Shown here piece by piece: positions 10,902-47,830 of a stretch of DNA of 64,000 nucleotides. The notes below the pieces were generated by a model. It made no database searches. It was not told the DNA's origin and saw only the letters and a program-made list of their open reading frames with translations. Origin of the DNA: Botryllus schlosseri. Lineage: Eukaryota. The stretch spans positions 19,282,001-19,346,000 of the forward strand of contig CM119376.1 of NCBI GenBank assembly GCA_051294905.1. Direction: 5' to 3'. Within the stretch, counting starts at the first letter, position 1. Each line of letters opens with the position of its first letter. The translations under genes and the position numbers were made by a program.

Positions 10902-10974
10902 ATGTATCGGAAGGATAGATGTTTCTTGCTCTTCAACGCTGTCATGATGAATGCCTTTTGCATGTTTTATCCGG
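10902..10974 (+). CDS. Dscam: Dscam-like coding exon 1, signal peptide
   Basis: AAAT-ATG; MYRKDRCFLLFNAVMMNAFCMFYP (basic n-region, hydrophobic h-region); phase-1 donor G|GTAAGT joins 19262 in frame to give ...FYPVSS/TTVSI. Confidence 0.75.
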
Positions 10975-13900
10975 GTAAGTCTTTTAAATTGTTATTCCAT
11001 GTCAATGCGCTAATTTACAAGGTAAACATTCGTCGCAGACCATATGCTGAAGTCACACAGTAAGCCGCTTTGGAAAGTGGTGTTCTGTCGGACTTTGCGG
11101 TCTGGTTTTGCGAATATTCTCCCTTCAATTTTCCTGTGCGCCCATAAAACTAATTCAGTGAATAGAACTTGATAGTCGCGCCTATCTCCGGGCAGTGCAC
11201 CTCGTAAAATGGAATTAATGTACAACCTCATTTGGCGGGATAACGTATTTGCGCGGTAGATCAAAATTTATCATCGCCGTCTCCGATTCCTGAATCCTTA
11301 CTGATCTACAAATATCCGAGCCATCCCAAAGTAGCATATGTACCTCAAAAGTTCCGCCTCTGTTTATTCTGTAGCTAAGTACAGTTTACATTCGACTCCA
11401 AGCGTAGGTCACCGGTGTAGACATGCAATGAGATTATTTATAAATCGTAACTCAACTTCTGGCGCGGAAATAGCACCGAATTATACATGGTTCTTGATAT
11501 ATTATTATTAGTTTATTAACCAAAGAATGTTTCAGCCTCTCTACTCCGCTCGCCCAAAGCTAGCTATTATATATAATAAAATCCCATCAATTCATTCAAT
11601 TGCTAATCAGTCACCGAATTATAATACCTACCATTCCCGTTATTATTATAATGACATCGTACATCATTTAATATGTGATAATATGATTACGGTATATGTT
11701 ACATTCCTTCGTTTTGCGCTGAGACAACAATCGACCCAAATACCGGTCTTCCCTTAATTTCATGTACATAAGCAACGTTGTTGTTTGTTTTGGTGTCAAT
11801 CACATTGTATTGTCACGTCACTAAACATGTGTCCGGAATCTCCACCTGTATATCGCTCAACACTGACAGTCCACTAATGAGTTGTTCGGATTCTCAAATA
11901 AGACAACATGTCAATAATGTTTCTTGAATTTAATAAAAGTACGTTCTTAACTATACCTAAATGTACTAAGGTAGGCACTAGGCAGACGGTGAGACGACTT
12001 GATCTTTGTTCTTGAGCTATAATTGATAGACCTCTGCAGTCACCGCATTGCTAATCGCGAACCATGTAGTGATTAACTAACCGTCGAAAACACGTAGGTC
12101 GAAGGCACGCCGGTGGGTTTGGCGACAGTTTCAAAAACACGCCGCAAACTTATTTTGGGCTATTTTGTCCTAGTAGGAGTATAGTAAACGATGATGGTGA
12201 CGCTAATGCATTTGTATGATATCGTCCCGTAAAATATGAAAAACTTGAGAAATGAATGCAGCTACTGGATCAAAATAAAAAAATTCCTAATTCCTCGATA
12301 GAGTAAATCCAAATATAATCATTCGCAGATTAGGGCTCCGCCGCAATTAATACAATCAGCTGTCAGTAATTTGTTATAAATTCGATTGAAGCGTATTTGT
12401 GCATGGAATATATATTTTTTGTCTGAACGGAGATAATGCGTATAATACAGTACGGTATATATAGAGTTGGTAAGTCATATTAATCAGAAACTCATTCAGA
12501 ATTCCTAACCGTCTAGCTTTGTTTCGGCCACTGTTCCCATCTTAGTATTGTATGTTGTTCCGTTGACGAAAGTCCTGTGGCGCGAGGTTACTAATATTTC
12601 AAATACTTTCGCATGGCGCGCGGGTCGTCAGTCCTCAATTTGCCGCGAAACTTTTGATATTTGAACTCTCTGCAAGTCGCGGTTCATGTCACCCGCAATA
12701 TGAACCCCGTCTCGGTATCGACCGCCTCGATTGAGACAATGTTTTGATGACAGCACGCTCAACCTCTCGCCGTTTTGACGGCTACGAAATTTTTGTAAGC
12801 TGAGTGTGCAAACAAGTTCTCGGTGTATACGACGTGAACGTGACTAAGAAGTTTTGGCGAAGTGTCTTTCCCCACATCATACGGGCGATTGATGTCGCAT
12901 ATTTTTCTATCTACATATCTTGAAAATGCTGGTACGGAAACATGTCGCGATGAAGATCAGTGGCATACTAAAAAGTCGGAGTCGACTGATGATATTGCAC
13001 TAGTACTAAAAGCGCTTGAGGCTGTGTTAACATTCCTTTTAACCTATGATTTGAATCACGCTACTACACGCAACCTCATGTGTTTATGTGTAGCCGAAAA
13101 TTGGCGTTCCTGGTTCGAAGCCACAATCATGAGATCATCCACGGCGCCGCGAAGCGTTGGGGTAAAATTATCGGATTTTACTCTGCAATAAGGCCTTCCT
13201 CGACAGATGCTAGGTGACGGTGGGGAAATGTTATGCTTATTGTTGTCGGGCGTAAGAACATAAGTCTGTGATAGCAGAGTCAACTGAGGCCGTTCATCCG
13301 AAAAAAATGACTCATAACATATCGTGGCTTACCTTGCCCGCATTGTTATGGTTGAAACACCCTTGGAATATAGTGCTGTTGAATGATGTTTCAAATAAAT
13401 CAAGTCGCGTTAGCAAGTGCTAAACGACACAATTCATAAGCGTATACTACGCGGCAGCAATATCAGTCGAAAAGCCGTCATAGACAAAACCTTAATGAAG
13501 TAAAGGTAACTGGAAGGTGGCGAAACCACACTCGAACTTCTAGAGGCGCGTCTTCCGCCTAAATTAGGTAATTGACGCTAATATATAGATTACTAGTCCT
13601 TGTAACAGCAGGTGGTGTAAATACTTCTCGTGTTTGCGAAGTAGTTGTGATCCGACACCGATGCAGCGCGAAACACAAGACGCCCACGCTTAGCATTGGG
13701 TTAAACTATGATTCTGGATGTTTCCGAACTCAATTCTTTCGATTATACTTTTCCCATGGACACTTAATTTCGAATGGGAAATTTGAACTGCAACAAATCA
13801 AGTGCCAGGTAACTTGCAACTGTGAGAAAATAATATCAACACGGTCTGCGCGACCTTTGCGTAGCGATAGAGGCGCTTGGTGTGTCGCTACAAATTTCGT

Positions 13901-16608
13901 GCAAGTTGGTAGAATTCCAAATTCACCATCGTTGTACAATGTTAGATTATGCCAATAAGTTAATTCCGCACGGACTTTATCAAACGTCTTTCTACCAACG
14001 CTCAGTGCCGATTGCTTCGTGTATATTGTACAAGAATAAATGTATCTTTCGCTAACGTCATTCCGACGACAGAAAACGCCAAGTTAGCTGTCACAATTCG
14101 AAAACCTGTCAGGAGCTTCTACCAAACAGGAGAGTTTCATTCCTCTTGAGAAAGCATGAGCGATGAGCGTATAGACCACGATACCTGTTTGATGTCGTCC
14201 TCATCAGGCAAACGGGTCGCGTTATTTTCAAACTTTTGTCTACAATGCGGCTCATGAATATTTAAACGAGCTCTCATCGCCTGCCAGCCGTACATCAGTT
14301 TTACTAAATAACGGGAATAACTTCAGACTAACGAACGACTGGCGAATGTACGCGTATCTAATTGTATTTTGTTGCCATGCGCGCCAAACCGTTGGTCTGG
14401 TCACGGATTATGAAAGGTCGTCAGGATTACCCAATAAGTGGCAAATTATGCTGGTTATTTCCGGCGCGTAATGACCGACTGCAATCAGTCACTGAATGAG
14501 TGAGTCCGTCCGCGGGTACCTGGTAATTAATCAAGGGATTCAAGTCAACCGGTACATTTCTTCGTTAACATAGTTATCACGCACTATTATTAGTGCAAAG
14601 TTATTGACGCATACTCTAAACGGGATGTGTGCTGTATTGTGGGTGATAGCATATATTGTTGGAGTCGAAATGGCCATAGGACATCCTTACAACGCGGTTC
14701 AACCAGAGACACTCTATAAAATTACATTCGTCAGCATCGGCTGTAAAACTATCAAATATAAACTCATCAAATTCATTTTTGAGACCACACACCAAGGCAC
14801 TTGATAATGAGCGGACAGAACAACCGATCTTGGTTCGATTCCAAATTCCGTTTCCACATCTTATTGCTTACCGACTAATCGAAAAGCATTAGTTTGAAAC
14901 GAACTAGATTGCAATTTATTATTATATCAAGTGGATGCCAATCATCACTGTCGTGGAAGCACACTCTGTGATCTCGCATGGCGACAAAAATTCCAACGCA
15001 GCTAATGTATCGCCAACAACACGAAATGTATTCGTTGTGTTACTACCGAACAATTTGAAAATCATTTCATTTAAATCGGTTATCGAATTTAACAGTTTAG
15101 GACAGTAACACCATGTACTGTTCAACACAGTTAAAACGAACACAAATAACTGTTCCGAAATGATACCTGCTGTCCTGTATGCTGGACGGCCTTTGGCACG
15201 GACACTGGGAGGAAATTCGCGAGTCTGCATGGTACATGTAGCCTATGCAAACTCATCATACCTCAAACTCTTTGAAGTAATGATAACGGACGCGCGCTGC
15301 CGTTTGATGTAATTATCCAATGTTTTTACAAGTTATGCCCGAAGTACCCTACACGCGAAACGGATCGCTTATTTTTAATATCCCAGCCGGTTGGTTTGAA
15401 AGCTTATAACGGAATTGAAATTCAATTTTCCGCCTTGTGACCCTGGAAGTCAATCCGCCGGGAAGCATGCATCTCCTTCCCCACTTATTAAATTCTGCAA
15501 CGTTTGTTAAAGGGCAGCCGTCAGTCATAAGACAAGACTAGAGAATTTTTGCGGCCATGTAGGATTGATTACGATGTATGATTTCTAAATTTCTGGGTGG
15601 TAAAAAGTCTTGTAGGCTATGCTATTGATGGAGGTTTATGATATATCATATTTTACATATGTCGTATGTAATCTACCAATTATTTTTGCACATTCGACAA
15701 ATCCGCATTGTTGAGAATAATATGCATTTGGCGATACTCGTTTATTTCGGTTCAATCACTAGCGAAGCACCGCAATAACCCGTAATCAAGACATCGTAAT
15801 TAGTGGACGGAAAGTCTTCATTGGGCATAAAAGCGTGGTTTTTGCGGCATTGTGTCTGGAACATGATGGCTAATTATAAGCTAGAACGTACACAAAATTA
15901 TCAATACGCACGGAATGAAAAAAAGGTAAAATAGGGATTCAGTATAGATTTCGGGTTCGAAATAGGAAACCGCCAGTGGCAAATATTCCTCAATTAGTAA
16001 ATGAAATGAAGTCATTGTGTCGCAATACACGCAGCCGACATAATTAGCAGTTAAGTACCGTGACTAACACGGAAAAGGATTATCTGGTGATCGTCGTTAA
16101 TCGCATTATTTGAGTACATAATATACGCAATGCTGGAACATAAATCAAATGAAAGTACTGTGTTCTGTTGTTAACACCCCGAGCAAGCAACAAGTAATCG
16201 CGTACTGCAATTTATTATGACATTTGAATTGACTGCTGCAATACCTCGATAGAAAATATCTCACCTATCTTAACTGAATGCAGATTTCAAGGCTAGTTTC
16301 GTCGCAATATCACTGACCCAATTTTGAAATATCGAATCGACAAGCTCAATGTCAATTATCCTCCAGTAAGCCGTGGTTAAATCTGCATATGTAGTGTATA
16401 TGCAATTGAATAAAATGTAGGGTGTGTAGTGTGCATACTGTATATAGTATAAAATTCTACAGGTACATTGAAATCAAGTTACTACACAGGGGGCGAATTA
16501 CCATTAGCCTATTTCTCGACCTATTTACATTGATTTACATTCGCGAGACGTCAAACCCTTTGCCATCCATTCGACACGAAGTGTTGAGGTGCAGACTATC
16601 TGCGAAGC

Positions 16609-18985
16609 GGGTGCCTTTATTTTGTGCTAGGAAACTTATGAAAATTATGGAAACTTATGAAACTTATGAAAACTTATGAAACTTATGAAAACTTATGAAA
16701 CTTATGAAACTTATGAAAACTTATGAAAACTTATGAAACTTATGAAAACTTATGAAACTTATGAAACTTATGAAAACTTATGAAACTTATGAAACTTATG
16801 AAAACTTATGAAAACTTATGAAATTTATAGAAACTTATGAATCTTATGGGAAATTATGAAACTTATAAAACATGAGGTAAATTAATTCAGATTCGAAGTT
16901 TATTGTGAGACCATTGCCTCGGTATTCGATACCAAATTGGGATTTTTAAATCATGATTGCAATAATGGCAATCAAGATTTACATAGACCAGTGGTTGCCA
17001 AAATCTTCAACCTCGCGGCACCCTCTGTAAATGGAAAATAGTCAGCGGCACCCTAGCATTATCGACCTTTTTTGGCTAGCAGCACACTGTAAACTACCGG
17101 AAGATTTGACAGCACCGATAGACACACGGAGGTGATCTCTGACGAAGCTATTTTACCTATTCGGTGACCGCGAGTAGGCTTTGCCTTCTTGTACTATACT
17201 TAAAACCATGCGGTAACTAAGTGCCAGCACGCCTAATAAGAGAATGCTGGGGAGTGTTCTGATTGCAATATGAATTTATAAACTTGAACATCGACGACGC
17301 TTCATTTCTTGATGGTAATTAGGAAGGCAATGAGGTTTTGAAAACCGCATTGTCTCACAGGCGCCAGTATGTCTGCGATCAATCAACGCATCGTACAAAA
17401 CTGGATTAACCCTTCTCGGCACGCGATATGTCTGGTAAACCGAGTTCGCGTGGATATTGGTTGTCGGCATGACAGAAATAATATTTTTACAAATAAACTT
17501 CACATCGACACCGACGGATTATAATTTAGATCAGTGGTTCCCAAACTTTTTCGGTGTCAGGGCCAAATTTAGAATTTCAGAGCACGGTCGGGGCCGCACG
17601 AATACCAGGGCAACGGACCCAAAATGTCATCAAAATATGATGATTGGTCGATGTGCGGTGATTCTATCTACAATTCTACATATAATTTTTAAAATCATAA
17701 TCATTGGGAACGATAAGTAACAACATATTCATACGTCACATATGAGTGTATCACGACTTCGCGAGTATCTTCAATAATATCGCGAACCGGAAAGGTTGTC
17801 TTAAAGCATAGTTTAAGCTTATCTTTACTTGAGTGGCATTGACGTCGACTATTATTTCCAAAGATACCAATTCAGCGTCAATCAGCAAACGCGACTGTGT
17901 CGCAATCTTCATATGCTAAATTGCTAACACGTGACCCAATTTGATTGCCGCGCGGGGAAAGTTCAAGATTGCGCAATGTGCACAATATCTCAGATGCGCT
18001 GGTAGACGTCTCATTGTTTTGATGTACTCTCTGTTTTTCACAACAGATTAAATAAAAATGCTAACTCTCCGGACGAAGCTTTAATTCTTCCACAATTACG
18101 AACAATGTTTATGTAAATTGCATTGTTAATTTAGGAGAATACCAGATACCCTGATTCCGACATAATTGTCTACTTAGAGCGAAATGCTGGTAATCTCTAA
18201 TTTAATTCTGATATTTGTCAATGCTTTACAATTTTGAATCTAATCTACTTCTGGTTTTCCGGAAAATAGTACTGAACTGTATAGTCCGGAACAAACCGAG
18301 GTTGTTGTACAGACATTTGCCATTCTCGTGCTTATAACAAAGAGCTCTGACTTAATTGTTATGAACTGAATTTATCTCAATTTCCACAACTGGTCGTGAA
18401 ATTTATCCGAGTTATCCAACTTCACACTGACAACGCCCACGGTTTTCACTTGGCATTCGAAATAAATTTAAGCAAAGTAAAGGTGAATGAGTCCAGTATA
18501 ATTCACGGTAATAAATTTTTTCTTTCCAGTCAGGTTTATAATATAGGACGGTTTCAACTAAAATTGATTGATTATTTGGCTTGTATTCATTATATCATTG
18601 CGATTGTTGCTTTACAATGTTTTTTTTAATTCTCTACTAGCTACTGACGATTACCCCTGACGTGTTTCAGCCGAAAATAATCGGGTTCATTTCAATAGGA
18701 AGATATTCTTAAATTGTATATTGAACGGCTCTTCACCCAAGAGCTCTTTATCTTCATAAGTTTCCATAAGTTTCATAAGTTTTCATAAGTTACATAAGTT
18801 TCCATAAGTCTCATAAGTTTTCATAAGTGTCATAAGTTTCATAAGTTTTCATAAGTTTCATAAGTTTCATAAGTTTTCATAAGTTTCATAAGTTTTCATA
18901 AGTTTTCATAAGTTTCATAAGTTTTCATAAGTTTCATAAGTTTCCATAATTTTCATAAGTTTCCTAGCACAAAATAAAGGCACCC
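16609..18985. mobile_element. Foldback-type DNA transposon, non-autonomous, 2377 bp
   Basis: TIRs GGGTGCCTTTATTTTGTGCTAGG followed by mirrored arrays of 9/10-bp AAACTTATG units (about 16631-16870 and 18753-18963); TSD TGCGAAGC at 16601-16608 and 18986-18993. Confidence 0.9.
18653..18686 (+). ncRNA. Degenerate hammerhead copy in a Penelope-like pLTR fragment
   Basis: ACCC-CTGACGT-G(TTTCAGC)C-GAAA-ATAAT-C-GGGT; core A9 changed to T and helix III palindrome broken. Confidence 0.65.
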
Positions 18986-19261
18986 TGCGAAGCCCGTACA
19001 CCAGTAAAAACGCAATCGCATTCAAATCGCATATTGCAGCGTTGAGGGTATTAAAATGCAATTTGACTCTTGAGATAAATTGGATCAAGCCCAGTCAAAC
19101 GCTCGCCGCCCCTGCGCGATCCGGGTAATTGCAGCTTAGCTTACCGTTCCGTGTTATTTCGTCGTTGAAAATGACTCATATTTACGGTCTGTCCATGTAA
19201 CGTTTATTCTAAATTGTATCGAACCATCTGTTATTATCTCATCGAATATGTATTTCTCTAG

Positions 19262-19712
19262 TTTCATCAACGACCGTGTCGATTGTTTCTGGATTTGAAA
19301 GACGGCTTCTGCAACAAGGCGAGAGCGTCACGCTTACATGCACAGCCACCGGTGCATATCACGTGTCAATAAGGTGGCTGCTGGACGGCCTGCCTTTGGA
19401 GTACGACCAAGATCCAACACAGACAAATAGCGTCTTCCAATCCGCGTACAATCCTTACAAATCCAACGCGGGGGAGTATTTGCATTCAAAATATTCGATT
19501 GAGACTTCTAATGAAGTATCAGACGACGATTCCGATACGAAATCGGTTGATGCAATTGAGACTGAAGAAGTAAACAGTACGGGAAACAAAAACATGTCAT
19601 TTACTGATCGTGATGACACCACTTCTGCGCCCGAAGCCATCCATATTCAATCACCAGTCAACAGTTTTATTGACGGACAGTCGATGAACGTACTGGATAT
19701 TTCAATAAACGA
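19262..19712 (+). CDS. Dscam: Dscam-like exon 2: Ig (DSCAM Ig5-like) N-half plus long acidic insert
   Basis: SIVSGFERRLLQQGESVTLTCTATG...IRWLLDGLPL, then about 100 low-complexity residues; donor GA|GTAAGG. Confidence 0.9.
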
Positions 19713-19823
19713 GTAAGGATGCATTTACACCGAAAATACAAATAGTTACACGTAGAAGTAAATTGTTATGATTCAAATTCATCATAATGCTATAAAGCAT
19801 CTAATCCACTCTTCACTTACCAG

Positions 19824-19963
19824 GGAGACACCCCGCCAGGTCACAATGAAGAGTTCGTTATCCCTGAACAACGCAACAGTGCAAGATGGCGGCATATACG
19901 CCTGCGTTGCACAAAGTGTATTTTTGCATACTGCGTCTTGGAGGAAGAAAATAACTGTGGCTG
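19824..19963 (+). CDS. Dscam: Dscam-like exon 3: first Ig C-half
   Basis: KSSLSLNNATVQDGGIYACVAQS (D-x-G-x-Y-x-C); phases 2/1. Confidence 0.92.
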
Positions 19964-20022
19964 GTAAGTGGTCGCGTCATGGCGGCAAACTTTGGGAATG
20001 CAGCAGCGCATTTTATCTACAG

Positions 20023-20169
20023 GACCACTGTCGCTAAGGCGCAACCGCCCTATCCCTGCATTGCTGAACTCACTGGTGATAATTCCGTGCACTGTGCTCG
20101 GTAGCGATGACGATTTCGATGTGAGATGGTTCTATCGAAAGTTTCCTGGGCGAGGTCGAAGCAATCTCG
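20023..20169 (+). CDS. Dscam: Dscam-like exon 4: Ig6-like N-half
   Basis: GPLSLRRNRPIPALLNSLVIIPCTVLG...VRWFYRK; two possible phase-1 donors, after 20154 or after 20169. Confidence 0.85.
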
Positions 20170-20232
20170 GTACGCATTACCCTCGAGGTTGTTGTTATTC
20201 GGCCCCTATTTAGTTTGTGTTTCAATTAATAG

Positions 20233-20400
20233 AATCCTCTGAAATTTGGGTGTCGATGCCGAACGATGCAAGACAGAAAATACACCAAAACGGAAGTTTG
20301 GAAATACCCGAAGCGAAGAAGTCCAACGAAGGCATATACAAGTGCCAGGTTGAATTAAATGGGATACTACAAGAGACGGAAACACCTATGAGGGTGATGG
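20233..20400 (+). CDS. Dscam: Dscam-like exon 5: Ig6-like C-half
   Basis: MPNDARQKIHQNGSLEI...NEGIYKCQV resembles DSCAM LPFNHRQVAFENNGTL...DEGEYTC; donor G|GTAAGT. Confidence 0.92.
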
Positions 20401-23400
20401 GTAAGTACAATGATAATTCCTCATTTCAACTGTGTTGCCGACTCCACGCCAAATATCTAAAATTATGGACATAAAATAGGGACATTAACGGATACAACAC
20501 GGCCCTATGAAAATGGGGGTGGCAGCAAATAAATATTCAGCAGTGACGTGACACTTCCCCGGAAGGAATGTAATAATTCAAATTGAGTATGTGGGCGGGG
20601 TGAAGGCGCATTTTTTCCTACTAACAACCGTGGACATATCTGCTCCTATACTCGAAGTCTGCGATATCGCCGCAACTGGGCTATATCTAAACATTTGTTT
20701 ACTTGTTTCTTCCTTCCTTCCTTTACTACTCAAAATATGATACCAAATTGCGGCAGATCCTCGTTATTCTGAGCTTCCATTACTCCCCGACCTATTCACG
20801 CTGACTTGGTGATGGTTTCTCCACGAAGTAAAAATTCCAATGGAAGTCTTGACTCTTGGTCGCTAGTCCTGCTTTCAATATCTTAAGTTCTTTGCCTCTC
20901 TAATTACAGGATTAGATGTTAGTGTGTTTGGTTTTATAGTATCAAAATATTCATATAGCTCGAGGTCGAGATGATAAGCCTTGAATATAATCTGAACTCA
21001 AGTTACAGGCTATATAAATGTGCTCTCCCGTGTTTTCAGTCACTAATCATCGCTATCATGGCGGCGACTATTATTTGTATAATTAAATATAACTATTACG
21101 AATATAATGTAATATACAACAGCTGGAACAAAGAGCCCGTAATTTTGTTTTCAATTAATTATTATCAACTGGCATGTAATTTTTCATTGTTAGCTAATGC
21201 CAAAGGTTTTGCCAATGAAACATCGTGGCGTGTCCAATATATTATAAAGTCGAATCTGTTTGCACGGTGTATATTGTGTATGTTGCACTTTTTCTTCCTA
21301 TAAGGAGAGAGGATCTTACAAATGCATGCTGTTTGTCCATATGGTTGAAAAAAAAACGTGCAATAGGCACATCCTTTGTATATGAATCTGATTATGTCGC
21401 AACCGCTGACTGTCGCTTTTGTATAATGCAAAATTCATTAATGCATGGTATCGCCGGAATGTTGGACTCAGTCCCCACTCAGCTTTCTCGGCAATGAAAA
21501 TAAGCCACGTACTCTCAGTTGTTTCAGAGGTCTCCAAAGTTCAAAACCACAAGTTCAAAGCACAGGTTGACAAGATCCTTGCATTTATGCAGCGCATTTG
21601 CCGAGATCATGCTGATAAAACGACTGATATGTCATGCGTCATACACTCGTACCGCCCATTACGGCACTGATGAGATATGTAACGGCAATTTTCTAGATTT
21701 AGATATGGTTAGCGATAATACGCGAATCACACACAACTACCGCCAATGATCATTATTTCGTGTTTTCAGTGTTAAATGCACCAGGCGAAATCTGGTAAGG
21801 TGCCCCTCACCCTCACACCACGATTTCCTGGTGACCAAATTACGTTGTAACTGGGTTATCGTAATTCTTTGATGAAAAATCCACTCGCCCGGCAAAATTA
21901 CTGACTTATGATATTAATCGCATTCGATTTGGTCAAAGTATTGCGTTGCCCTTGTGCAATATTACCTTATTGCTGCATCACTTGGATTTAATCAGTCCAT
22001 CGGCTATGGACGTCATCATGTTTGCCAAACATCGTGGCACATTCCTCTTGACTTGTCTGGATATTTTCTGTTTAAATTTCACGGTATGAGTATGTGTGCA
22101 TCGATCTCCAAAGACACGTCTTCTTCGGCTTGCCTTGCAAAATAACTTGTATAAGACTTTTGGAAGTGGTTGTGTTGCAGTCGTATTTATTTTGCTCAAT
22201 CGATGTGAATTGATACTATTTGATAGTTAGTGGTTAGTAGTGCAATATATTTGTGTTCCTCATGCCTTTTCAGTCCGTCGTATATCACGATTGCAAACCT
22301 CATCGTCTGTAAGTTCCACATCAGTATAAACATCCCATCGAATTTTGGATTATAAATAATCAATTGAAAAAGTCTCCCAAATTCGGACACGCAAACCTAT
22401 GCAAATCCTTCGTAGATTGATACTGGGATGCGTGAAATCATCGCTATCTGGTAATGGATACTGTTTCATAACATTTCACTTTTGTGTGTGATTGTCACGA
22501 CCTTTAAACCTAGTAATGACTTTGCGCTGTTCCGCCCACACACCTTCCGAGACTTTGCGTTGTTTTGCGCCCAGAATTATTACGTGTCTTCCAGCAACTA
22601 TAGCTACGTTTTACCGTATTTGGTCTTTCATCGCGTGATGGCCTATCATCCATTTAAGATCTAGAATCCTAGAAAACATCCACTAACGATTTTCGGAGAG
22701 TGCAATGTAAAACGAGGCATCGCCACAAACTCTCGAATGGCTTTGCTGACTTTGGCGTAACACAAAATACTAACACCTATCGGTATTTGATTTGACTGCA
22801 CGCATGGCCGAATCCCGTCTTAATTTGCCTGCTCTTACCGTTTCGCGGGATTAATTATTTATTCAAAGCCGCGTTTGCACACAAACAAACAATTGCTTCG
22901 TCAACACGAGGTAATAGAAAACATCTGTCTGTGACTTTACGCGCACAACTTCCGCGTGTTGGGAAAATCAGCAGTCTCTTATCCCCATACATCCCATCAA
23001 CTAGTTTTATTCGCGTCTATGACATTGTCATCTCGAAAAACTAAACATGACGGAATACCTTTTTTCGTTTAATCAGATAATAGATAACTCGCCAGCTGAC
23101 AGAAGGGCCTGCTCGTCTGGCGTATAGACGCGCAAATCCTTGATACAACAAAAATATCGACCCCGGTATGATTTGCGTGAAGTTGCGATCGCAGGCGTAC
23201 GACCCCCGATAATCGCCCGGTAACATTAAATATCGACTTTCATCGGCGGCGTAAGCCACGTAACGGCGATTCCCATTTCCCAGATGCGTAATTAAAATTG
23301 ATCAAGCGCAGACCGACGGTATGATAGTTGACGTTATGGCAGGCGGCGACGGATATATCTAGTGATTGTCGCGCCGCAGTGCATCTGCCTCGCTGTCCGA

Positions 23401-27153: not shown

Positions 27154-27322
27154 TCCCTCCGAAAATCAAGGTTTTCGCGTTCGAAGCTGTCAGAGTCGGG
27201 CAGCCTTTCGCCGAATTCTGCGTGATCACGGAAGGCGACCTACCTCTCAACATATACTGGAAGAAAGACGGCGTCACGATACGACCGAACGATCGCATCG
27301 AAATGACCCGTTCAGCAGTAAG
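27154..27322 (+). CDS. Dscam: Dscam-like exon 6: Ig7-like N-half
   Basis: VPPKIKVFAFEAVRVGQPFAEFCVITEGDLPLNIYWKKDG resembles DSCAM Ig7 VPPFIQPFEFP...CVVVSGDLPITITWQKDG; donor AG|GTAAGT. Confidence 0.93.
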
Positions 27323-32556: not shown

Positions 32557-32672
32557 TACGTCGCTGTCCCTGTCCATACGCAGCGTTACTCTGGAACTGG
32601 CTGGGGACTACACATGCTGCGCGTCGAACAACGTTAGCAGTACTTGCCACACAAGTTCTTTAGTCGTCCTGG
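32557..32672 (+). CDS. Dscam: Dscam-like exon 7: Ig7-like C-half
   Basis: TSLSLSIRSVTLELAGDYTCCASNNVSSTCHTSSLVVL; phases 2/1. Confidence 0.92.
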
Positions 32673-33071: not shown

Positions 33072-33194
33072 ATCCCCCGAAGATATTAAACCTGCCGTCC
33101 GAGCTATCGAAATTATCCGGAGACCGAGTGGAGATTAACTGCGAGGCAACCGGGTACCCGAAACCGAATATTACGTGGGCGCGTGTGTCGGCCG
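33072..33194 (+). CDS. Dscam: Dscam-like exon 8: Ig8-like N-half
   Basis: DPPKILNLPSELSKLSGDRVEINCEATGYPKPNITWARV; TTCAG acceptor and G|GTAAGC donor; not shown in the ORF track. Confidence 0.92.
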
Positions 33195-35476: not shown

Positions 35477-35680
35477 ACTCAAAAAGCGATTACATTTCCA
35501 TCCCGTTCCGAAAAGAGGACGATACAACAAAGGAAATCTTCGGATTTCCAAAAATATATCAAACCAAAAACGGATCGCTGGTCATCGCCAACGTATCGAG
35601 TCCAGACGCCGGGAAGTATTTCTGTCGGGCTAAGAACAATGTCGACGAGTCCAGTAACTTCTTATCGCTACAAGTGCACA
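35477..35680 (+). CDS. Dscam: Dscam-like exon 9: Ig8-like C-half
   Basis: SKSDYISIPF...KNGSLVIANVSSPDAGKYFCRAKNNV...LQVH; donor A|GTGAGT. The true frame differs from the ORF track entry at 35433. Confidence 0.92.
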
Positions 35681-35766: not shown

Positions 35767-35938
35767 ACCCGGCGAGAATCCTGGACGTGTTCGGCACGCG
35801 GGACATCACGCACAGGCGCGACTTGAGGCTGAAATGCACGACGTGGGGCGATGACGTCATATACGTGACGTGGTTAAAAGACGGCCGCGCGTTAACTGCC
35901 GGCCAAGCCCGCGTGCAAACAAGCGCGAAAGACCACGG
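35767..35938 (+). CDS. Dscam: Dscam-like exon 10: Ig9/Ig10-like N-half
   Basis: PARILDVFGTRDITHRRDLRLKCTTWGDDVIYVTWLKDG; donor GG|GTAAGT. Confidence 0.92.
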
Positions 35939-37199: not shown

Positions 37200-37339
37200 C
37201 AAGCTGGACTCGCAATACGCGGTCACCCTGAACAGATTGATGATCGGAAACGCGACCAGATCCGACACCGGGCTGTACACCTGCGTGGCTAAAAATAAAT
37301 ACGGAATCTCGAAGAGGGAGATGAGCGTCCTTGTGAGAG
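37200..37339 (+). CDS. Dscam: Dscam-like exon 11: fifth Ig C-half
   Basis: NRLMIGNATRSDTGLYTCVAKNKYGISKREMSVLVR; phases 2/1. Confidence 0.92.
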
Positions 37340-38146: not shown

Positions 38147-38311
38147 CGCCGCCGATGGCCCCGAGCGAATTCAAAGTCATCGACAAGGGAACCTCGTTTC
38201 TACGGCTGCTGGTCACGCCCGGCAAGGACGACGGAGGATCCAGAGTCTGGAAATATCAACTCTCATATCTGCAATTAGCGCACGCGAACGACACGCCATC
38301 TTCGCCAGAAG
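38147..38311 (+). CDS. Dscam: Dscam-like exon 12: FN3 (FN5-like) N-half
   Basis: PPMAPSEFKVIDKGTSFLRLLVTPGKDDGGSRVWKYQLSY resembles DSCAM FN5 PPDQP...[20 protein letters not shown]. Confidence 0.9.
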
Positions 38312-39592: not shown

Positions 39593-39796
39593 GTATCCCA
39601 ACACAGACCAAGTCTCTGGACGAAGCGAATTCGCCCGTGCGCGTTACTCGACCCGCGTCAGCGAAGCCGGGAGCGCAGGAGATCGTTTTGGATAAGTTGG
39701 AATGCGGCACCAAGTACGAAGTTGTCATCAGAGCTAAAAACGAAATCGGCGCCAGCCCTCTTGCGACAGGCCTGACCGCTACCACATTAGGGACAG
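39593..39796 (+). CDS. Dscam: Dscam-like exon 13: FN5-like C-half
   Basis: LDKLECGTKYEVVIRAKNEIGAS...ATTLG resembles DSCAM [21 protein letters not shown]...AKTLG. Confidence 0.92.
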
Positions 39797-41306: not shown

Positions 41307-41408
41307 CCCCTGTGTTACCGGCGGAGAAAGAGCTACTGGTATTCAAGAATCAAACGACAGTTGTTTTGGATTTGCGTGCATTTCAGAACGGCGGTTGCCC
41401 GATCACAG
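41307..41408 (+). CDS. Dscam: Dscam-like exon 14: FN6-like start
   Basis: APVLPAEKELLVFKNQTTVVLDLRAFQNGGCPIT resembles DSCAM [28 protein letters not shown]. Confidence 0.93.
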
Positions 41409-42048: not shown

Positions 42049-42200
42049 AATTATGGATCGAAATAGCTCAACACGGAACCACGGAATGGAACGTGACGAA
42101 ACTGGATAGGGAAGTTCTCGACGGACGATTATCAGGCGACACCAAAACCGGAGACGTCGGAGATCAAAATCCCGGTTATTTCGTTTTTACGGATTTACAC
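42049..42200 (+). CDS. Dscam: Dscam-like exon 15: FN6-like middle
   Basis: LWIEIAQHGTTEWNV...YFVFTDLH; TACAG acceptor and |GTGAGT donor; phases 1/0. Confidence 0.88.
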
Positions 42201-42283: not shown

Positions 42284-42403
42284 GTCGGCACTTGGTACAA
42301 GGTGTGGACATCGGCTTGCAACGTGGCCGGGTGCAATTACAAGACGTATTCTTTAGCGACACTTCTTGCCAACGGAGCTACCATACCACCGATAGAAAGA
42401 AAG
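42284..42403 (+). CDS. Dscam: Dscam-like exon 16: FN6-like end
   Basis: VGTWYKVWTSACNVAGC...ATLLANGATIPP resembles DSCAM ATWYELQMRVCNSAGC...ATLNYDGSTIPP. Confidence 0.93.
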
Positions 42404-43182: not shown

Positions 43183-43562
43183 GGTTCTATACCAATACCG
43201 AGAAAACCATTACCGAGAACGGATGTTACCGAGAATGGACATTACCGAGAATGGTCATTACCGAGAATGGTCATTACCGAGAATGGTCATTACCGAGAAA
43301 GGACACCACAGAGAATGGACGTTACCGAGAATGGCCAATGCCAAGAATCTAACTTGCTGGGACGGACGCTGTCGAGAAATTTATACACCTAAGAACCGAC
43401 ACCGAATGCGGCAAAGCCGTGATGCACATGCACACGGCCTCTTCATATGCATAACATGCCTGAATTTCATACATTGCATTCTCGGTAATGCCCATTCTCT
43501 GTGGTGCCCATTTTCGGTAATGAAATTCTCGGTAATGGTTTTCTCGGTATTGACCAGATACC
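43183..43562. mobile_element. Small foldback-like MITE with 15-bp TACCGAGAATGG subrepeats
   Basis: CAATACCGAGAAAACCATTACCGAGAA at the left is mirrored by TTCTCGGTAATGGTTTTCTCGGTATTG at the right; tandem 15-mers inside both arms. Confidence 0.8.
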
Positions 43563-43699: not shown

Positions 43700-43829
43700 A
43701 CCGCCGAATCTCACGACCGTCGATTCCTGATTCCCATGATCTGCGGATTCGGACTCGTCATCCTACTAGCGTCGCTTCTCCTGCTGTACAGGCACAAGCA
43801 ACGCGCCAAGAAAGTCACGCGGATGAAAG
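43700..43829 (+). CDS. Dscam: Dscam-like exon 17: transmembrane helix
   Basis: FLIPMICGFGLVILLASLLLLY followed by basic RHKQRAKK; phases 0/1. The frame differs from ORF track entry 43501. Confidence 0.92.
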
Positions 43830-43960: not shown

Positions 43961-44124
43961 CGGCAAAGAAAATGGCCCGCACTCTGCTGTACAAAACGGA
44001 CGACGACGGCCCGCCTGATTCGGGAATACGAGTGAGTTTACCGAACGCGGAAGGCACCAGCCCGGCTTCCGTACTCGTGGAGACGTCTGTCTCGATCGAT
44101 AGCGACGGCGAAACTTCAGTTCAG
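43961..44124 (+). CDS. Dscam: Dscam-like exon 18: cytoplasmic
   Basis: TTTTGTAG acceptor; AKKMARTLLYKTDDDGPPDSGIR...ETSVQ; phase-0 donor after 44124, or alternatively after 44031. Confidence 0.8.
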
Positions 44125-44168
44125 GTTGGCAAAACGCATTCATTACGATATATCGTATACATTGATAG

Positions 44169-44452
44169 TAGGGCTGTGCAAAATCGAGTACCTGAGTGAT
44201 TCGATTCAGAATCACGTATTATGCTTCGAGTCGAGTAGTCGAGTATCACTCATTATGACGTCACAACAGAATGAACTATGTCAAAGTTAAAATATGCACC
44301 TTTTATGTCACCACAAAGAATATAATGCCTAGCATCCGTTACATCAAAGATACTTCGATATTTTTCGACCATGCCGATTTCATTGCACTTCGTGACAATG
44401 TTGTGGGATGATCATGATTTCGGAAATGTGTTATTTCCAGTAACGTTCGTAG
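44169..44452 (+). mobile_element. Truncated copy of the TAGGGCTG hAT-MITE
   Basis: Colinear with the first part of 49640-50149 (AAAATCGAGTACCTGAGTGATTCGATT...GTAACGTTCGTAG); right TIR missing. Confidence 0.8.
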
Positions 44453-44656
44453 AAGTAGAAGTAGAAGCAGATCGGGTGTGTGTTAGTGACAGAGGCAAAC
44501 ATAGTGAAGTGTTGGTCAAAGGTATCATTGCTTACGTCGTCTTTGATGTTCTACATGAAATTTATTACGTACAATTCGCAGTTTCTCTACTGTCTGCCAT
44601 ACAGTTGGCGTGAAAGCGAAAAGGCCATCCTTAATTACCTTGTAATCCTGTTAAAG

Positions 44657-44891
44657 GCCGCGGAGCGTGGAGAAAGGCGCGGCTCCTGCGAACCCTTGGT
44701 GGATGACGCGGCGACGGAGAGATGCGACGTTTTGACTCATCTGCCGACTGTGAGCGCGGCGACTACGCTGTCGCAAGGGAAGGCGAGCGCTTGTAGCTGG
44801 GGCAGCGAGAGGACGAAAGTTTCAAGAGAGGGAAAGTTGTCGTTGAAAGACAACGCGGAACTGGCCGTGTTTAGAGATATGGCTTCTTCAG
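44657..44891 (+). CDS. Dscam: Dscam-like exon 19: cytoplasmic
   Basis: AAERGERRGSCEPLVDD...DMASS; GC-rich open block with phases 0/1 that fit its neighbours. Confidence 0.75.
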
Positions 44892-45216
44892 GTAAATGAA
44901 CGAAGATTTTTGATAATATGTTCCTGATTCGTTCGTTCTTACGATATTTGGATCCAGCATGCTTATATTTTGTTACCCATGGGTGGATATTGGTCTGTTT
45001 ACCAAATGGATGCAGTGCAGATGCAAATACTGGTGGTATGCTGGTTAATAGATGCCAGTTTTGTATGTAGTGTACAAAGTATTTTTGACCTTGTCCACTT
45101 CTTAAGTATTCTTCAAGACGTCTGTACACAGTTTACAATGTACAGTTTGTATATGTACAATGTACATGTACAGTTGTACACTTATTCACGCGTAAAGCGC
45201 TGTAATATCGTTTTAG

Positions 45217-46389
45217 ATGACGAAGATCCATCCACCGAACCTTTGGTTTGCGACGAGAGCGCCTTCGGAGACTCCGGTACCTGGTCGTTTTTCAAACCCG
45301 CCCGCGGCGCGGCGATCGCAAAAACCGACCGGGCGCTGCCGAAAAAAGCAACCAAGCCGGCGGTCAGCAGGCAGTCTTCCACGTCGTCCGGCACAGACGA
45401 AGAACTAGCCCAAGTTTTCGGGCTGTCTTGCTCGAAACATAAACCGGAGACGGAGAAAAACAGGACGTCCGACGTTAACAAAAACTACAGACCGTCATCA
45501 AACGAAGACAATCGCAGCACGAGGGAGCGGAAACCACCCGGTAGTCGAAATCGACAAGAAAAACAATTCCCGAGACCAGGGTTAATCGCGGACTTGGTAA
45601 AGCAAGAGCTTCGCTCTAATTCAACCGGTATGATGCAGAAAAACGACCCGCGCCATTTCAGACCGTTAAATAATGACGGCGCACACGGCGCTAAGCGCCA
45701 ACACCAGGTAAACACCCGACCGAACCCGGCGTTCAACACTTCCAATCATACTCAGTTTAATATGCACCGGCCCTATAGCGGTCACCAGCGAGGCAATACC
45801 TACGCTAACGACCACACGCACGATTTGAAAAGTCAACTAACCGCGCACGCGCAGAACGCAGACATTTTACGCGCTTCTCCGTACGGAGAACGTCAATGGG
45901 TAGACACGTACGACTCCAGATGCAGCACTAATCGTAGTAAACCACCCTCGTGGGGTTCAATCGAATTGGACAAACAAGGTTATCTTACGCCGCCCCCTAG
46001 CGCAGACCCAACACCATTGCGACCGCATCGCGATAGGGGGACGCCTAAATACAGAGGTAGCGATACGAACACAGACACCGACGCTGTATTTGACTACCCA
46101 GCGAAAGACAACAGCAGGAAACTGGACACTAGCAGCCCGCGCGATTCGGGTATCGGAAGTGACGAAGGCCCCGCGTCGAGGCATTTGACGGCGTCTGTCT
46201 CTCCGGCGACCATGAAGGTCAGGGCAGGGCGGAAGTCTCTGGACAGTTTGGACGAGATGGAGATGAAAAAAGGCGAGGGGTTGATTTCGGGAAACGCGTA
46301 TTCGAACGCGAGGAAGGAACATCAATTTATGATGTCGCCCCCGCTCACGCCGCCGGTAAACCAGGCCAAATTGCAGCCTCACATTTTCG
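45217..46389 (+). CDS. Dscam: Dscam-like exon 20: large low-complexity cytoplasmic exon (391 codons)
   Basis: TTTTAG acceptor; open for 1173 nt; contains PPPS/PPLTPP; donor G|GTGAGT. Confidence 0.88.
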
Positions 46390-46460
46390 GTGAGTGTTGT
46401 GATACTGACATAGCAGAGAGCTCGCATTCGTATTCCCGCATTCGTATTTTGGTGTATCTG

Positions 46461-46878
46461 TAGTAAGGCGGAGCATCGATCGGAGTCGGATTGTATATCC
46501 GGCCGGTTTTTCTCATTTTTGACCGGAGCCGGATCAGTACTTTTTTGAAACGGTCGGACTCGGATCAGCAATATTTACTAAGAATATGACAGCATTGACA
46601 GCCTTACTTACCCTCTTCCCCCCAATCAATAGTTAAAGTGAAACGTTCATGGAAATAAACCACATGCTAAGTCCAAGTTGGCAATATTACTTCAGATAAA
46701 GGCTTGGCTTGATCTTTTGAGTTTTTAATTCTCTTGCATTGTTTCAGTCAATATTCAATACCAGCCTGTGAACAGATTATTATTATTGGAGTGTTTCGGA
46801 CCGGATCACGGTCATTTCTAGAATCCGGCCTAGGAGTCGGACCGGAGACCAGAGAATTTGTCGATCCGCTCCGCACTA
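46461..46878. mobile_element. MITE with CCGGA/GGATC subterminal repeats
   Basis: Imperfect TIRs TAGTAAGGCGGAGCATCGATC and GATCCGCTCCGCACTA; no TSD. Confidence 0.5.
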
Positions 46879-47516
46879 TTCTGTACGGTGTGGAGTCATT
46901 TGTTGATTAAATGTCTGCTATCTCAGCTTAATAACACATAAATTGATTCTATACAGATACGGCCTTACAATAGTAGTGGCTGTTACTGTTACCCTTGAGG
47001 ATGGTTCTACCTCACATGATTTCATAGCGATTAATGGCGGAGTTCATAGCCACAGAGGTCATGAATTTCAAGGATTACAGCAGAGCCTACCGGTCGATTT
47101 CGAAATCAGCTGATACTCTCCGAGTTCGGTGAATTATTTATCCCCTTCACACATGCCAACAATAATATTTACTGGTTGCATTATATTATCTAATTGAGGT
47201 CGTTATGTCATATTGAAAGATTATTTACACATGGAGTTCATTTACTTTCCATGCCGCCATATTGCACAAACTGAAATTTCTCCCATGTGTTTTTCACCAC
47301 TTATTTACCTGACCAATGATGTCAATGGGGTGCGTTAATTGTTTATCTCTTAGTCAAGCACATCAGACAAACCCATAACGAGCCTAATATGTTGCACCGA
47401 TCAACACACTTGCGTCCGCCATTTACCAATGGTAAACTGAGCTAGCTGATTAATTACTAATTTGAGCCCTAACACATTGCCGCAATATCCTCAACAGTCT
47501 TACATACTTTTTCCAG

Positions 47517-47830
47517 TCGACATATCCTCGAAGAGCAACACAACGCCGCCAAGAACCGCGCGATCCTCCTATCCGCCTTGCGGGCAAAATGTTCCAATGG
47601 GCGGCAAACAACCGCGGAGATTAGACTGTATCCCGACGCCGCCCCCTTCCGGACACAACACCCCGGTGGACGGTACTGGGTCGAGACCCAAATCCAAACA
47701 GGACCGCTGGCTCGTAGCGGACTTGGACGGCAGGCACGATTCCCGCCACAAAAACAGGCCGCACAAGAAAGACTCGAATTATTCGCTCGGTAAAAAGGAT
47801 CGCGGCTGGCAAACGTCGACTCTCGTTTAA
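47517..47830 (+). CDS. Dscam: Dscam-like terminal exon ending in a PDZ-binding motif
   Basis: TTTTTCCAG acceptor, phase 1; ends ...WQTSTLV-TAA, compared with vertebrate DSCAM ...SYTLV. Confidence 0.9.

What the first reader, a model, noticed from the sequence alone, without database searches (positions are those of the whole stretch)
10902..47830. Shortened Dscam with an unusual 5 Ig + 2 FN3 architecture
Seen: 21 exons splice in frame (4662 nt using the longer donors) to give SP, 5 Ig, 2 FN3, TM and a tail ending STLV. Established: canonical Dscam is Ig1-9, FN1-4, Ig10, FN5-6, TM, with homophilic specificity in the Ig1-4 horseshoe (Ig2, Ig3) and Ig7; chelicerate sDscams are shortened differently (3 Ig + 3 FN). 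By recalled motif similarity this protein keeps Ig5-Ig8, one Ig9/10-like domain, FN5 and FN6. Inference: an independently derived short Dscam that lacks the horseshoe and must recognise partners differently, for example through Ig7 or heterophilically. I know of no description of this layout.
Basis: partly seen in the sequence, partly recalled or inferred. Interest (0 to 1): 0.85.

Follow-up and report, generated by a model that had tools for sequence, protein, structure and literature searches.

The report
Short DSCAM gene in sea squirts
This sea-squirt gene is a real, conserved relative of the nerve-cell recognition protein DSCAM that has lost nine of its sixteen outer domains, including the tip used for self-recognition in flies, so it shows what such a receptor can do without them.

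Summary
I rebuilt the same 21-exon, 4662-nt reading frame (1553 aa): signal peptide, 5 Ig, 2 FN3, a membrane span and a tail ending STLV.

Two other ascidians have the same layout:
- Styela clava RefSeq LOC120335542, annotated "uncharacterized".
- A 5.4-kb transcript contig whose start codon is preceded by stop codons in all three frames.

Domain scoring and trees place the seven domains with DSCAM Ig5, Ig6, Ig7, Ig8, Ig9/10, FN5 and FN6. The fits for Ig6, Ig8 and FN5 are weaker. Ig1-4 and five domains between Ig8 and FN5 (FN1-4 plus Ig9 or Ig10) are missing. Chelicerate sDscam keeps a different subset (Ig7-9 plus FN1, 2, 5).

No hidden Ig or FN3 exons lie in the window. Each exon is single-copy, and an exostosin-type gene ends about 8 kb upstream of exon 1.

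RNA contigs confirm four splice borders. Exon 1 is not verified.

Profile searches found no canonical DSCAM tip elsewhere in this genome, but this test is not exhaustive.

A modelled homodimer of the Ig7-like domain passed its controls. That pass may reflect memory of solved Dscam dimers.

I found no published description. I class it as a new variant of a known kind, of moderately high interest.

The parts
10902..10974 (+). Exon 1 (predicted): start codon and signal peptide, phase-1 donor
   Evidence: Best hydrophobic ATG-ORF with a strong GTAAGT donor in 2.9-19.26 kb. Not confirmed by reads or homology.
19262..19712 (+). Exon 2: first half of Ig a1 (DSCAM Ig5-like) plus an acidic Ser/Thr-rich insert of about 100 residues
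   Evidence: Pfam Ig hits. An RNA contig starts to fit at 19263, and 19467-19713 is continuous in a spliced contig. Orthologues carry the insert.
19824..19963 (+). Exon 3: second half of Ig a1
   Evidence: Junctions 19712/19824 and 19963/20023 are seen in an RNA contig of run X4. Pfam Ig.
20023..20169 (+). Exon 4: first half of Ig a2 (Ig6-like)
   Evidence: Acceptor confirmed by RNA contig. The donor was chosen by frame and the conserved Trp. tblastn with orthologues.
20233..20400 (+). Exon 5: second half of Ig a2
   Evidence: An RNA contig ends its fit at 20400. Pfam Ig.
27154..27322 (+). Exon 6: first half of Ig a3 (DSCAM Ig7-like)
   Evidence: Top genome-wide hit of an Ig7 profile built from canonical DSCAMs only, E 1.7e-8. 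Tree Ig7 clade 96.
32557..32672 (+). Exon 7: second half of Ig a3
   Evidence: Second hit of the Ig7 profile. Acceptor chosen by equal length with orthologues.
33072..33194 (+). Exon 8: first half of Ig a4 (Ig8-like)
   Evidence: HMM hit; tblastn 59-62% identity to orthologues.
35477..35680 (+). Exon 9: second half of Ig a4
   Evidence: Pfam ig/I-set; phmmer best class Ig8, 39 bits.
35767..35938 (+). Exon 10: first half of Ig a5 (Ig9/Ig10-like)
   Evidence: Pfam I-set. Tree places it with Ig9 at 93; phmmer ties Ig9 and Ig10.
37200..37339 (+). Exon 11: second half of Ig a5
   Evidence: Pfam I-set; splice sites.
38147..38311 (+). Exon 12: first half of FN3 a1 (FN5-like)
   Evidence: FN3 HMM hit; tree FN5 clade 81.
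39593..39796 (+). Exon 13: second half of FN3 a1
   Evidence: Pfam fn3; HMM hit.
41307..41408 (+). Exon 14: start of FN3 a2 (DSCAM FN6-like)
   Evidence: PF25059 positions 2-22.
42049..42200 (+). Exon 15: middle of FN3 a2
   Evidence: tblastn to orthologues; splice sites.
42284..42403 (+). Exon 16: end of FN3 a2
   Evidence: PF25059 positions 53-89, E 4.3e-7. FN6 clade 99.
43700..43829 (+). Exon 17: transmembrane helix and basic stop-transfer stretch
   Evidence: Reading of the sequence; 61-69% identity to orthologues.
43961..44124 (+). Exon 18: juxtamembrane cytoplasmic part (longer donor)
   Evidence: The orthologues read on through 44031, so the donor at 44124 fits.
44657..44891 (+). Exon 19: cytoplasmic
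   Evidence: tblastn to orthologues; frame. The acceptor is less certain (44582 is also in frame).
45217..46389 (+). Exon 20: large cytoplasmic exon
   Evidence: The acceptor at 45217 restores the orthologues' junction and gives 4662 nt. Held by 20 public runs from 6 studies.
47517..47830 (+). Exon 21: end of the tail, STLV, stop codon
   Evidence: tblastn. The last three residues, TLV, are the same as in vertebrate DSCAM and DSCAML1.

Best explanation
Shown: the window holds an intact, spliced gene for a DSCAM-family membrane protein with a shortened ectodomain. The gene is conserved among ascidians.

Shown: its seven outer domains correspond, in order, to DSCAM Ig5, Ig6, Ig7, Ig8, an Ig9/Ig10-type domain, FN5 and FN6. 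A membrane span and a long disordered tail follow, and the tail ends in the same TLV PDZ-binding type of motif as vertebrate DSCAM.

Inferred: two in-frame block losses of phase-1 exons made it from a canonical 10 Ig + 6 FN3 ancestor. One removed Ig1-4. The other removed five domains between Ig8 and FN5. These losses are independent of the chelicerate sDscam.

Inferred mechanism: it is a neuronal surface receptor tethered to PDZ scaffolds. Lacking the Ig1-4 horseshoe, it would bind in trans through an antiparallel homodimer on the ABED face of its Ig7-like third domain, as fly Dscam1 Ig7 and sDscam Ig1 do. It keeps the Ig7-9 stretch reported to bind netrin-1.

The acidic, glycosylation-prone insert in the first Ig may act as a spacer. 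No test has been made of this.
For: Gene and layout:
- 21 exons, 4662 nt, 1553 aa, one stop.
- Four borders are seen in spliced RNA contigs.
- 51% identity over the whole length to a transcript-derived orthologue and 45% to Styela clava LOC120335542. Both have the same layout and end ASTLV.
- The orthologous transcript has stops in all frames before its ATG.

Family:
- PF25059 (DSCAM/DSCAML C-terminal FN3) scores 87 bits in the Styela protein against a cut-off of 39.
- A search with the FN3-to-membrane part returned only DSCAM, DSCAML1 or Dscam2 among its 26 non-tunicate hits.
- Canonical DSCAMs score 143-202 bits (most about 160-200; a centipede Dscam2 107), against 61-89 bits for sidekick, L1, Robo, CDON and nephrin.
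- Domain-class scores and trees agree.

No hidden exons, no exon arrays, and a GT64 gene lies upstream on the same strand.

Mechanism:
- The Ig7-like domain keeps all 14 invariant columns of DSCAM Ig7.
- The modelled homodimer scored 0.59 against a best control of 0.00 among 3 controls.
- That mark was reached by 21 of 30 proteins solved as pairs of one chain and by 0 of 23 solved as single chains.
- On eukaryotes it was reached by 17 of 29 (animals 7 of 16), but by only 1 of 7 with no older solved relative.
- The runs agree in at least 97% of contacts, and the partner's pLDDT is at least 92.
- The interface residues lie on strands A, B, E and D, the face used by Dscam1 Ig7 and sDscam Ig1 (PMC10154414).
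- The netrin site is reported at Ig7-Ig9 (PMC10154414, citing Ly 2008 and Liu 2009).
Against: - Exon 1 is unverified.
- Raw reads of one bulk RNA run showed no coverage of exons 2-5, so where the gene is expressed is unknown.
- The ascidian clade sits on a very long branch (2.26 changes per column). Its place among DSCAMs is unresolved in the Ig5-9 tree.
- aIg4 is unresolved in the domain tree, and aIg2 and aIg5 are ambiguous by score.
- The tail shows no significant similarity to vertebrate DSCAM tails apart from the last residues.
- Pfam Dscam_C was not found.
- The dimer model may be a memory of solved Dscam1 Ig7 dimers and says nothing about affinity.
- No binding, expression or loss-of-function data exist.
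Confidence: 0.8

Rival explanations
1. The short protein is a lineage-specific extra copy. A canonical 10 Ig + 6 FN3 DSCAM still exists elsewhere in this genome and does the classical job.
For: Whole-genome searches here work exon by exon and score only the best candidates. A single vertebrate DSCAM Ig5-9 query failed to recover even the window's own exons, so such single-protein searches can miss a diverged gene. The ascidian clade's position in the family tree is unresolved.
Against: - An Ig7 profile built from canonical DSCAMs alone ranks the window's exon first in the whole genome. No second DSCAM-like Ig7 stands out.
- Profiles of Ig1-4 and of Ig1-2 hit only generic single Ig exons. No run of four consecutive matches appears, and the Ig1-4 profile had no match to its Ig1-2 part.
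- The FN6-plus-membrane module occurs only in this gene.
- The two searches seeded with the ascidian orthologues returned no other tunicate protein.
Confidence: 0.15
2. Same gene, different mechanism. It no longer mediates homophilic recognition and works as a heterophilic receptor, for example for netrin through the retained Ig7-9-like stretch, or as a co-receptor.
For: - The horseshoe is gone. In fly Dscam1 its Ig2 and Ig3 domains carry two of the three homophilic contacts (PMC10084454).
- The netrin-1 site is reported at Ig7-Ig9 (PMC10154414).
- The large acidic insert in the outermost Ig could hinder close trans contacts.
Against: - The Ig7-like domain models as a symmetric ABED-face homodimer: score 0.59, best of 3 controls 0.00.
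- That mark was reached by 21 of 30 proteins solved as pairs of one chain and by 0 of 23 solved as single chains.
- On eukaryotes it was reached by 17 of 29 (animals 7 of 16), but by only 1 of 7 with no older solved relative.
- The runs agree in at least 97% of contacts, and the partner's pLDDT is at least 92.
- sDscam, which also lacks the horseshoe, is homophilic through this very domain (PMC10154414).
- The two mechanisms do not exclude each other.
Confidence: 0.3
3. It belongs to another IgSF family that normally has 5 Ig + 2 FN3 (NCAM, IgSF9/Turtle type) and only resembles DSCAM.
For: The domain count and the PDZ-type C-terminus are the same as in those families. This is recalled knowledge and was not tested against their sequences here.
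Against: - Six of the seven domains fall inside single DSCAM domain clades, and aIg4 scores best with Ig8.
- PF25059 scores 87 bits.
- The FN3-to-membrane search returned only DSCAM-family proteins, although IgSF9-sized proteins were within the length range.
Confidence: 0.02
4. It is an artefact: a truncated gene model caused by mis-assembly, or a decaying pseudogene.
For: Exon 1 is only predicted. The RNA contigs differ from the window by 5-10%.
Against: - The 1553-aa frame is intact.
- The same layout occurs in two other species, one from a complete transcript.
- Spliced RNA contigs exist.
- The ectodomain is better conserved than the tail.
- No Ig or FN3 remnants lie in introns or flanks.
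Confidence: 0.03

Closest known systems
Vertebrate DSCAM and DSCAML1 (canonical 9 Ig, 4 FN3, Ig10, 2 FN3)
   Same: - Domain-by-domain kinship of Ig5-9 and FN5-6.
- DSCAM-type membrane-proximal FN3 (PF25059).
- Single membrane span and a long disordered tail.
- The same last three residues, TLV.
- The FN6-like domain is sister to vertebrate FN6 at 84% support.
   Different: - Lacks Ig1-4 (the horseshoe), FN1-4 and one of Ig9/Ig10.
- Carries an insert of about 100 residues in its first Ig.
- The tail is otherwise not alignable.
Chelicerate sDscam (3 Ig + 3 FN3; PMC4835542, PMC10154414)
   Same: A DSCAM derivative that has lost the N-terminal horseshoe and Ig10 and keeps Ig7-9. It is likely to rely on the Ig7-type antiparallel dimer.
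   Different: - sDscam keeps Ig7-9 and FN1, 2, 5. The ascidian protein keeps Ig5-9/10 and FN5, 6.
- sDscam has tandem 5' cassettes chosen by alternative promoters. Here every exon is single-copy.
- The host lineage is a chordate, not an arthropod.
Chelicerate Dscams lacking FN3-4 and Ig10 (9 Ig + 4 FN3; PMC4835542; P0165 and P0172)
   Same: They show that an in-frame loss around Ig10 is tolerated in this family.
   Different: They keep Ig1-9 and FN1-2. The ascidian loss is larger and is combined with loss of the horseshoe.
NCAM and IgSF9/Turtle (5 Ig + 2 FN3)
   Same: Same domain count. IgSF9 also has a PDZ-type C-terminus (recalled, not tested here).
   Different: The domains here descend from DSCAM Ig5-9 and FN5-6. 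The resemblance is one of layout, not of ancestry.

Membership tests
DSCAM family | Ectodomain of 9 Ig, 4 FN3, Ig10, 2 FN3 | tested here: not met
   HMM segmentation gives 5 Ig + 2 FN3 in the window's protein and both orthologues, against 16 domains in 11 canonical DSCAMs.
DSCAM family | N-terminal Ig1-4 horseshoe | tested here: not met
   The signal peptide is followed directly by the Ig5-like domain. No Ig exons lie upstream in the window. No Ig1-2 matches of DSCAM type occur in the genome.
DSCAM family | DSCAM/DSCAML-type membrane-proximal FN3 (Pfam PF25059) | tested here: met
   87.4 bits against a cut-off of 39 in the Styela orthologue. Partial exon hits in the window. FN6 clade at 99%.
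DSCAM family | Each domain descends from a specific DSCAM domain, in the same order | tested here: met
   Ig5, Ig6, Ig7, Ig8, Ig9/10, FN5, FN6 by phmmer classes and trees. aIg4 is supported by score only, and aIg5 is not resolved between Ig9 and Ig10. Colinear BLAST alignments.
DSCAM family | [quoted passage not shown] | tested here: met
   Membrane span from residue 891. The window's protein ends STLV, against YTLV in six vertebrate DSCAM/DSCAML1 proteins.
DSCAM family | Cytoplasmic Dscam_C domain (Pfam PF12355) | tested here: not met
   No hit in the tail exons or in the genome. Among the hits, this family is listed only for insect Dscams and for none of the vertebrate DSCAM/DSCAML1 proteins, so it is not universal.
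DSCAM family | Homophilic binding | not testable with these tools
   Only a model. The Ig7-like homodimer scored 0.59 against a best control of 0.00 among 3 controls. The mark was reached by 21 of 30 proteins solved as pairs of one chain and by 0 of 23 solved as single chains. On eukaryotes it was reached by 17 of 29 (animals 7 of 16), but by only 1 of 7 with no older solved relative. The runs agree in at least 97% of contacts, and the partner's pLDDT is at least 92.
Chelicerate sDscam | Retains Ig7-9 and FN1, 2, 5 only | tested here: not met
   Here Ig5 and Ig6 are also kept, and the FN3 domains are of FN5 and FN6 type.
Chelicerate sDscam | Tandem arrays of 5' variable cassettes | tested here: not met
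   Self-tblastn finds each exon once in the window.
NCAM / IgSF9-Turtle | Domains related to those families rather than to DSCAM | tested here: inconclusive
   No NCAM or IgSF9 sequence was in the comparison set. The indirect evidence points to DSCAM.

The most novel reading that the evidence does not exclude
This short form is the only DSCAM of these ascidians. In that case the sister group of vertebrates has discarded the Ig1-4 horseshoe and the FN1-4 stalk altogether. It would run DSCAM-type recognition or netrin sensing on an Ig5-9 + FN5-6 core. This would be a second, independent shortening of Dscam after the chelicerate one, without any isoform diversity.
Probability: 0.5. Interest if true: 0.7.

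Novelty: new variant of a known kind. Interest (0 to 1): 0.62.

Why it matters
A recent review calls the DSCAM layout "strongly conserved" across animals (PMC10084454). The only well-known shortened form is the chelicerate sDscam.

A conserved chordate DSCAM without the horseshoe is a natural deletion experiment. It asks which domains are needed for recognition, netrin binding and signalling.

Ascidian larvae have very few neurons and can be manipulated genetically, so the question can be tested directly.

It also corrects an annotation: the Styela clava protein is listed as "uncharacterized". It may explain why an early survey found no homologues of fly Dscam exons 4 and 6 (the variable Ig2 and Ig3 exons) in a tunicate genome (PMC1397879).

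Tried and rejected
- PDB sequence search with the FN6 exon gave only chance hits.
- Pfam PF25059 as a genome probe is not specific. Its core matches titin-like FN3 arrays.
- Single-protein probes of the own genome (starfish or fish DSCAM parts) were too insensitive. The fish Ig5-9 control did not recover the window's own exons. I therefore used profiles with a working control.
- The locus C10:15.336 Mb, the best hit of several probes, is a small generic Ig gene and not a DSCAM.
- Attempts to verify exon 1 failed. There was no homology to the orthologues' signal peptides. The run X4 contig carries 27 further letters upstream of 19263, but they were not printed. A fragment search returned only one genomic ORF of a relative.
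- Hybrid test of the fifth Ig. The first half scores nearer Ig10 and the second half nearer Ig9. This is the reverse of what a simple unequal crossover between Ig9 and Ig10 predicts, so the result is inconclusive.
- The concatenated Ig5-9 tree left the ascidian branch unresolved.
- The tail shows no significant similarity to DSCAM tails.
- Literature searches found no description of a tunicate DSCAM layout.
Full report
**Setting.** The window is G000:C6:19282001-19346000 of a 496-Mb chromosome-level genome. Earlier notes of this scan call the animal a sea squirt. This fits the closest proteins, which are from Styela clava and from an unnamed transcriptome. The window has no N runs.

**The observation.**
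- Stop-free stretches on the + strand between 19.2 and 47.8 kb carry Ig and FN3 signatures.
- Choosing GT-AG sites by frame, and in four places by comparison with orthologues, gives 21 exons and a 4662-nt coding sequence of 1553 aa.
- Every border between domains is in phase 1, as is usual for IgSF genes.
- The order is signal peptide, five Ig, two FN3, a membrane span from residue 891 and a tail of about 640 residues ending STLV.

**RNA evidence.**
- Twenty public runs from six studies hold the large tail exon.
- I laid four runs on 14501-20500. Contigs of run X4 start to fit at 19263 and join 19712 to 19824 and 19963 to 20023 (GT..AG).
- The same contigs end their fit at 20400 and run unbroken through 19467-19713. 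The acidic insert is therefore part of the message.
- The contigs differ from the window by 5-10%, which I read as allelic or population divergence.
- The sampled raw reads of a bulk RNA run (about 6% of the run) gave no coverage of exons 2-5, so expression there is low or absent.
- Nothing else in 14.5-19.2 kb looks like an exon of this gene. The deep pile at 18.5-18.7 kb is a repeat.

**The 5' end.**
- Exon 1 (10902-10974) is the best candidate among all ATG-started, hydrophobic, phase-1 exons in the 16 kb upstream of exon 2. It has a GTAAGT donor. Nothing confirms it.
- The architecture does not depend on exon 1.
- Upstream, an exostosin-type gene (Glyco_transf_64, profile positions 1-217) runs on the same strand to 2938.
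- A DSCAM-trained Ig/FN3 model finds no further domain-coding stretch in any frame of the window.

**Orthologues.**
- A search of 1.8 billion representative proteins with exon 2 found a 1648-aa protein in which the match begins at residue 36. It is Styela clava LOC120335542, "uncharacterized protein".
- A second orthologue, of 1607 aa, comes from a 5391-nt assembled transcript (SRR32906208). Its 167-nt leader has stops in all three frames, so its reading frame is complete at the N-terminus.
- Both go from signal peptide straight into the domain that matches exon 2. Both carry the insert, have 5 Ig + 2 FN3 and end ASTLV.
- Identity to the window's protein is 45% and 51% over the full length.
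- Shorter ORF fragments from further relatives exist, at 72%, 52% and 44% identity to exon 2.

**Which family.**
- Pfam's DSCAM/DSCAML C-terminal FN3 model scores 87 bits in the Styela protein against a cut-off of 39. It hits the matching exons of the window.
- A search restricted to the FN3-to-juxtamembrane part returned 26 non-tunicate proteins. All are DSCAM, DSCAML1 or Dscam2.
- In pairwise comparison, most canonical DSCAMs score about 160-200 bits in one colinear alignment (range 107-202). A second alignment covers Ig10-FN5-FN6-TM.
- Sidekick, L1, Robo, CDON and nephrin score 61-89 bits.

**Which domains.** I cut 11 canonical DSCAMs and the three ascidian proteins into domains with iterated HMMs. 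Mean phmmer scores of the window's domains against each canonical class are below.

| Ascidian domain | Best class (bits) | Next class (bits) |
|---|---|---|
| aIg1 | Ig5 (27) | 18 |
| aIg2 | Ig6 (12) | Ig8 (12), a tie |
| aIg3 | Ig7 (52) | 19 |
| aIg4 | Ig8 (39) | 27 |
| aIg5 | Ig10 (23) | Ig9 (22) |
| aFN1 | FN5 (21) | FN2 (18) |
| aFN2 | FN6 (46) | 9 |

- Maximum-likelihood trees with sidekick, Robo, CDON and L1 domains as outsiders put aIg1 in the Ig5 clade (96), aIg2 with Ig6 (86), aIg3 in Ig7 (96) and aIg5 with Ig9 (93).
- They put aFN1 in FN5 (81) and aFN2 in FN6 (99), sister to vertebrate FN6 at 84. aIg4 is unresolved.
- The protein is therefore a colinear subset of DSCAM. Ig1-4 are gone, and a block of five domains between Ig8 and FN5 is gone.
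- Splitting aIg5 at its exon border does not support a simple Ig9-N/Ig10-C hybrid. If anything the halves lean the other way.

**Relation to sDscam.**
- Chelicerate sDscam lacks Ig1-6, Ig10 and FN3-4 and FN6. It keeps Ig7-9 and FN1, 2, 5, and has tandem 5' cassettes (PMC4835542, PMC10154414).
- The ascidian protein keeps a different subset and has no duplicated exons.
- Independence is thus inferred from content, gene structure and host lineage.
- The Ig5-9 tree cannot place the very long ascidian branch.

**Is there a canonical copy as well?**
- Single-sequence probes were too weak.
- An Ig7 profile built only from canonical DSCAMs finds the window's exon as the best match in the genome. This validates the profile approach.
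- Profiles of Ig1-4 and of Ig1-2 find only generic single Ig exons and no DSCAM-like run.
- The FN6-plus-membrane module is unique to this gene.
- This argues against a canonical paralogue but does not exclude one.

**How it may work.**
- The Ig7-like domain aligns without gaps to DSCAM Ig7 and keeps its 14 invariant positions.
- Two copies were modelled. The score was 0.59 and the best of 3 controls 0.00.
- That mark was reached by 21 of 30 proteins solved as pairs of one chain and by 0 of 23 solved as single chains.
- On eukaryotes it was reached by 17 of 29 (animals 7 of 16), but by only 1 of 7 with no older solved relative.
- The runs agree in at least 97% of contacts, and the partner's pLDDT is at least 92.
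- The symmetric interface uses strands A, B, D and E. This is the face that Dscam1 Ig7 and sDscam Ig1 use for antiparallel dimers (PMC10154414). Since such dimers are solved, the pass may be memory.
- The Ig7-9 stretch is reported to hold the netrin-1 site (PMC10154414).
- The C-terminal TLV matches vertebrate DSCAM/DSCAML1. Their PDZ-interacting ends matter in vivo (PMC10084454, citing Garrett 2016).
- Everything in this section beyond sequence likeness is inference.

**Novelty.**
- I found no paper that describes a tunicate DSCAM layout.
- Crayton et al. 2006 found no tunicate homologues of fly Dscam exons 4, 6, 9 and 17, but did find homologues of some constitutive exons (PMC1397879).
- For exons 4 and 6 (Ig2 and Ig3 in the fly) that fits a gene without the horseshoe.
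- The Styela protein has been public but unnamed.

Noticed in passing
window 1-2938 (+): The 3' part of an exostosin-type glycosyltransferase gene. Four exon-sized stretches match Pfam Glyco_transf_64 positions 1-217 of 245. It bounds the DSCAM-like gene on its 5' side.
   Followed up: partly
window 19400-19712 (+): An acidic, Ser/Thr/Asn-rich insert of about 100 residues lies between the C' and E strands of the first Ig domain. It is present in all three species, with variable sequence and length. It is kept in the spliced RNA contig (19467-19713).
   Followed up: partly
window 16630-16871 and 18753-18963: Two arrays of 19/28-nt tandem repeats are reverse complements of each other. They bracket about 1.9 kb of intron 1. 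RNA-run contigs and reads pile up inside, to a depth of 547 at 18.5-18.7 kb, with many loose ends. This is probably a repeated mobile element.
   Followed up: no
window 4889-5060 and 53313-53480: The same ORF-like translation reads on both strands at 4889-5060, so this is a palindrome. A related stretch lies at 53.3 kb. Another note of this scan reports hammerhead ribozymes here. An Rfam scan of the window at gathering thresholds found no family at all.
   Followed up: partly
window 43208-43334: A 16-nt tandem repeat (7.9 copies) lies in the intron before the transmembrane exon. It gives a repetitive false ORF in two frames.
   Followed up: no
window 54554-54904: A long GA-rich simple repeat with a 121-nt higher-order period. 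It causes the GC-skew spike at 54-56 kb.
   Followed up: no
window 61515-63650 (-): Minus-strand open frames with Cys/His-rich, RING-like patterns give only weak Pfam RING hits (E 6e-4 and 4e-3, below the cut-offs). This is probably a separate gene downstream.
   Followed up: partly
G000:C6:19518165-20015798 (about 0.17-0.67 Mb downstream of the window): A cluster of at least eight single-exon Ig-domain ORFs on both strands matches any DSCAM Ig profile weakly. It looks like a local family of Ig genes, not DSCAM parts.
   Followed up: no
G000:C12:9.31-9.45 Mb and C5:3.65-3.84 Mb: Very long arrays of FN3 and Ig exons (titin/twitchin-like) dominate every FN3 or Ig probe of this genome.
   Followed up: no
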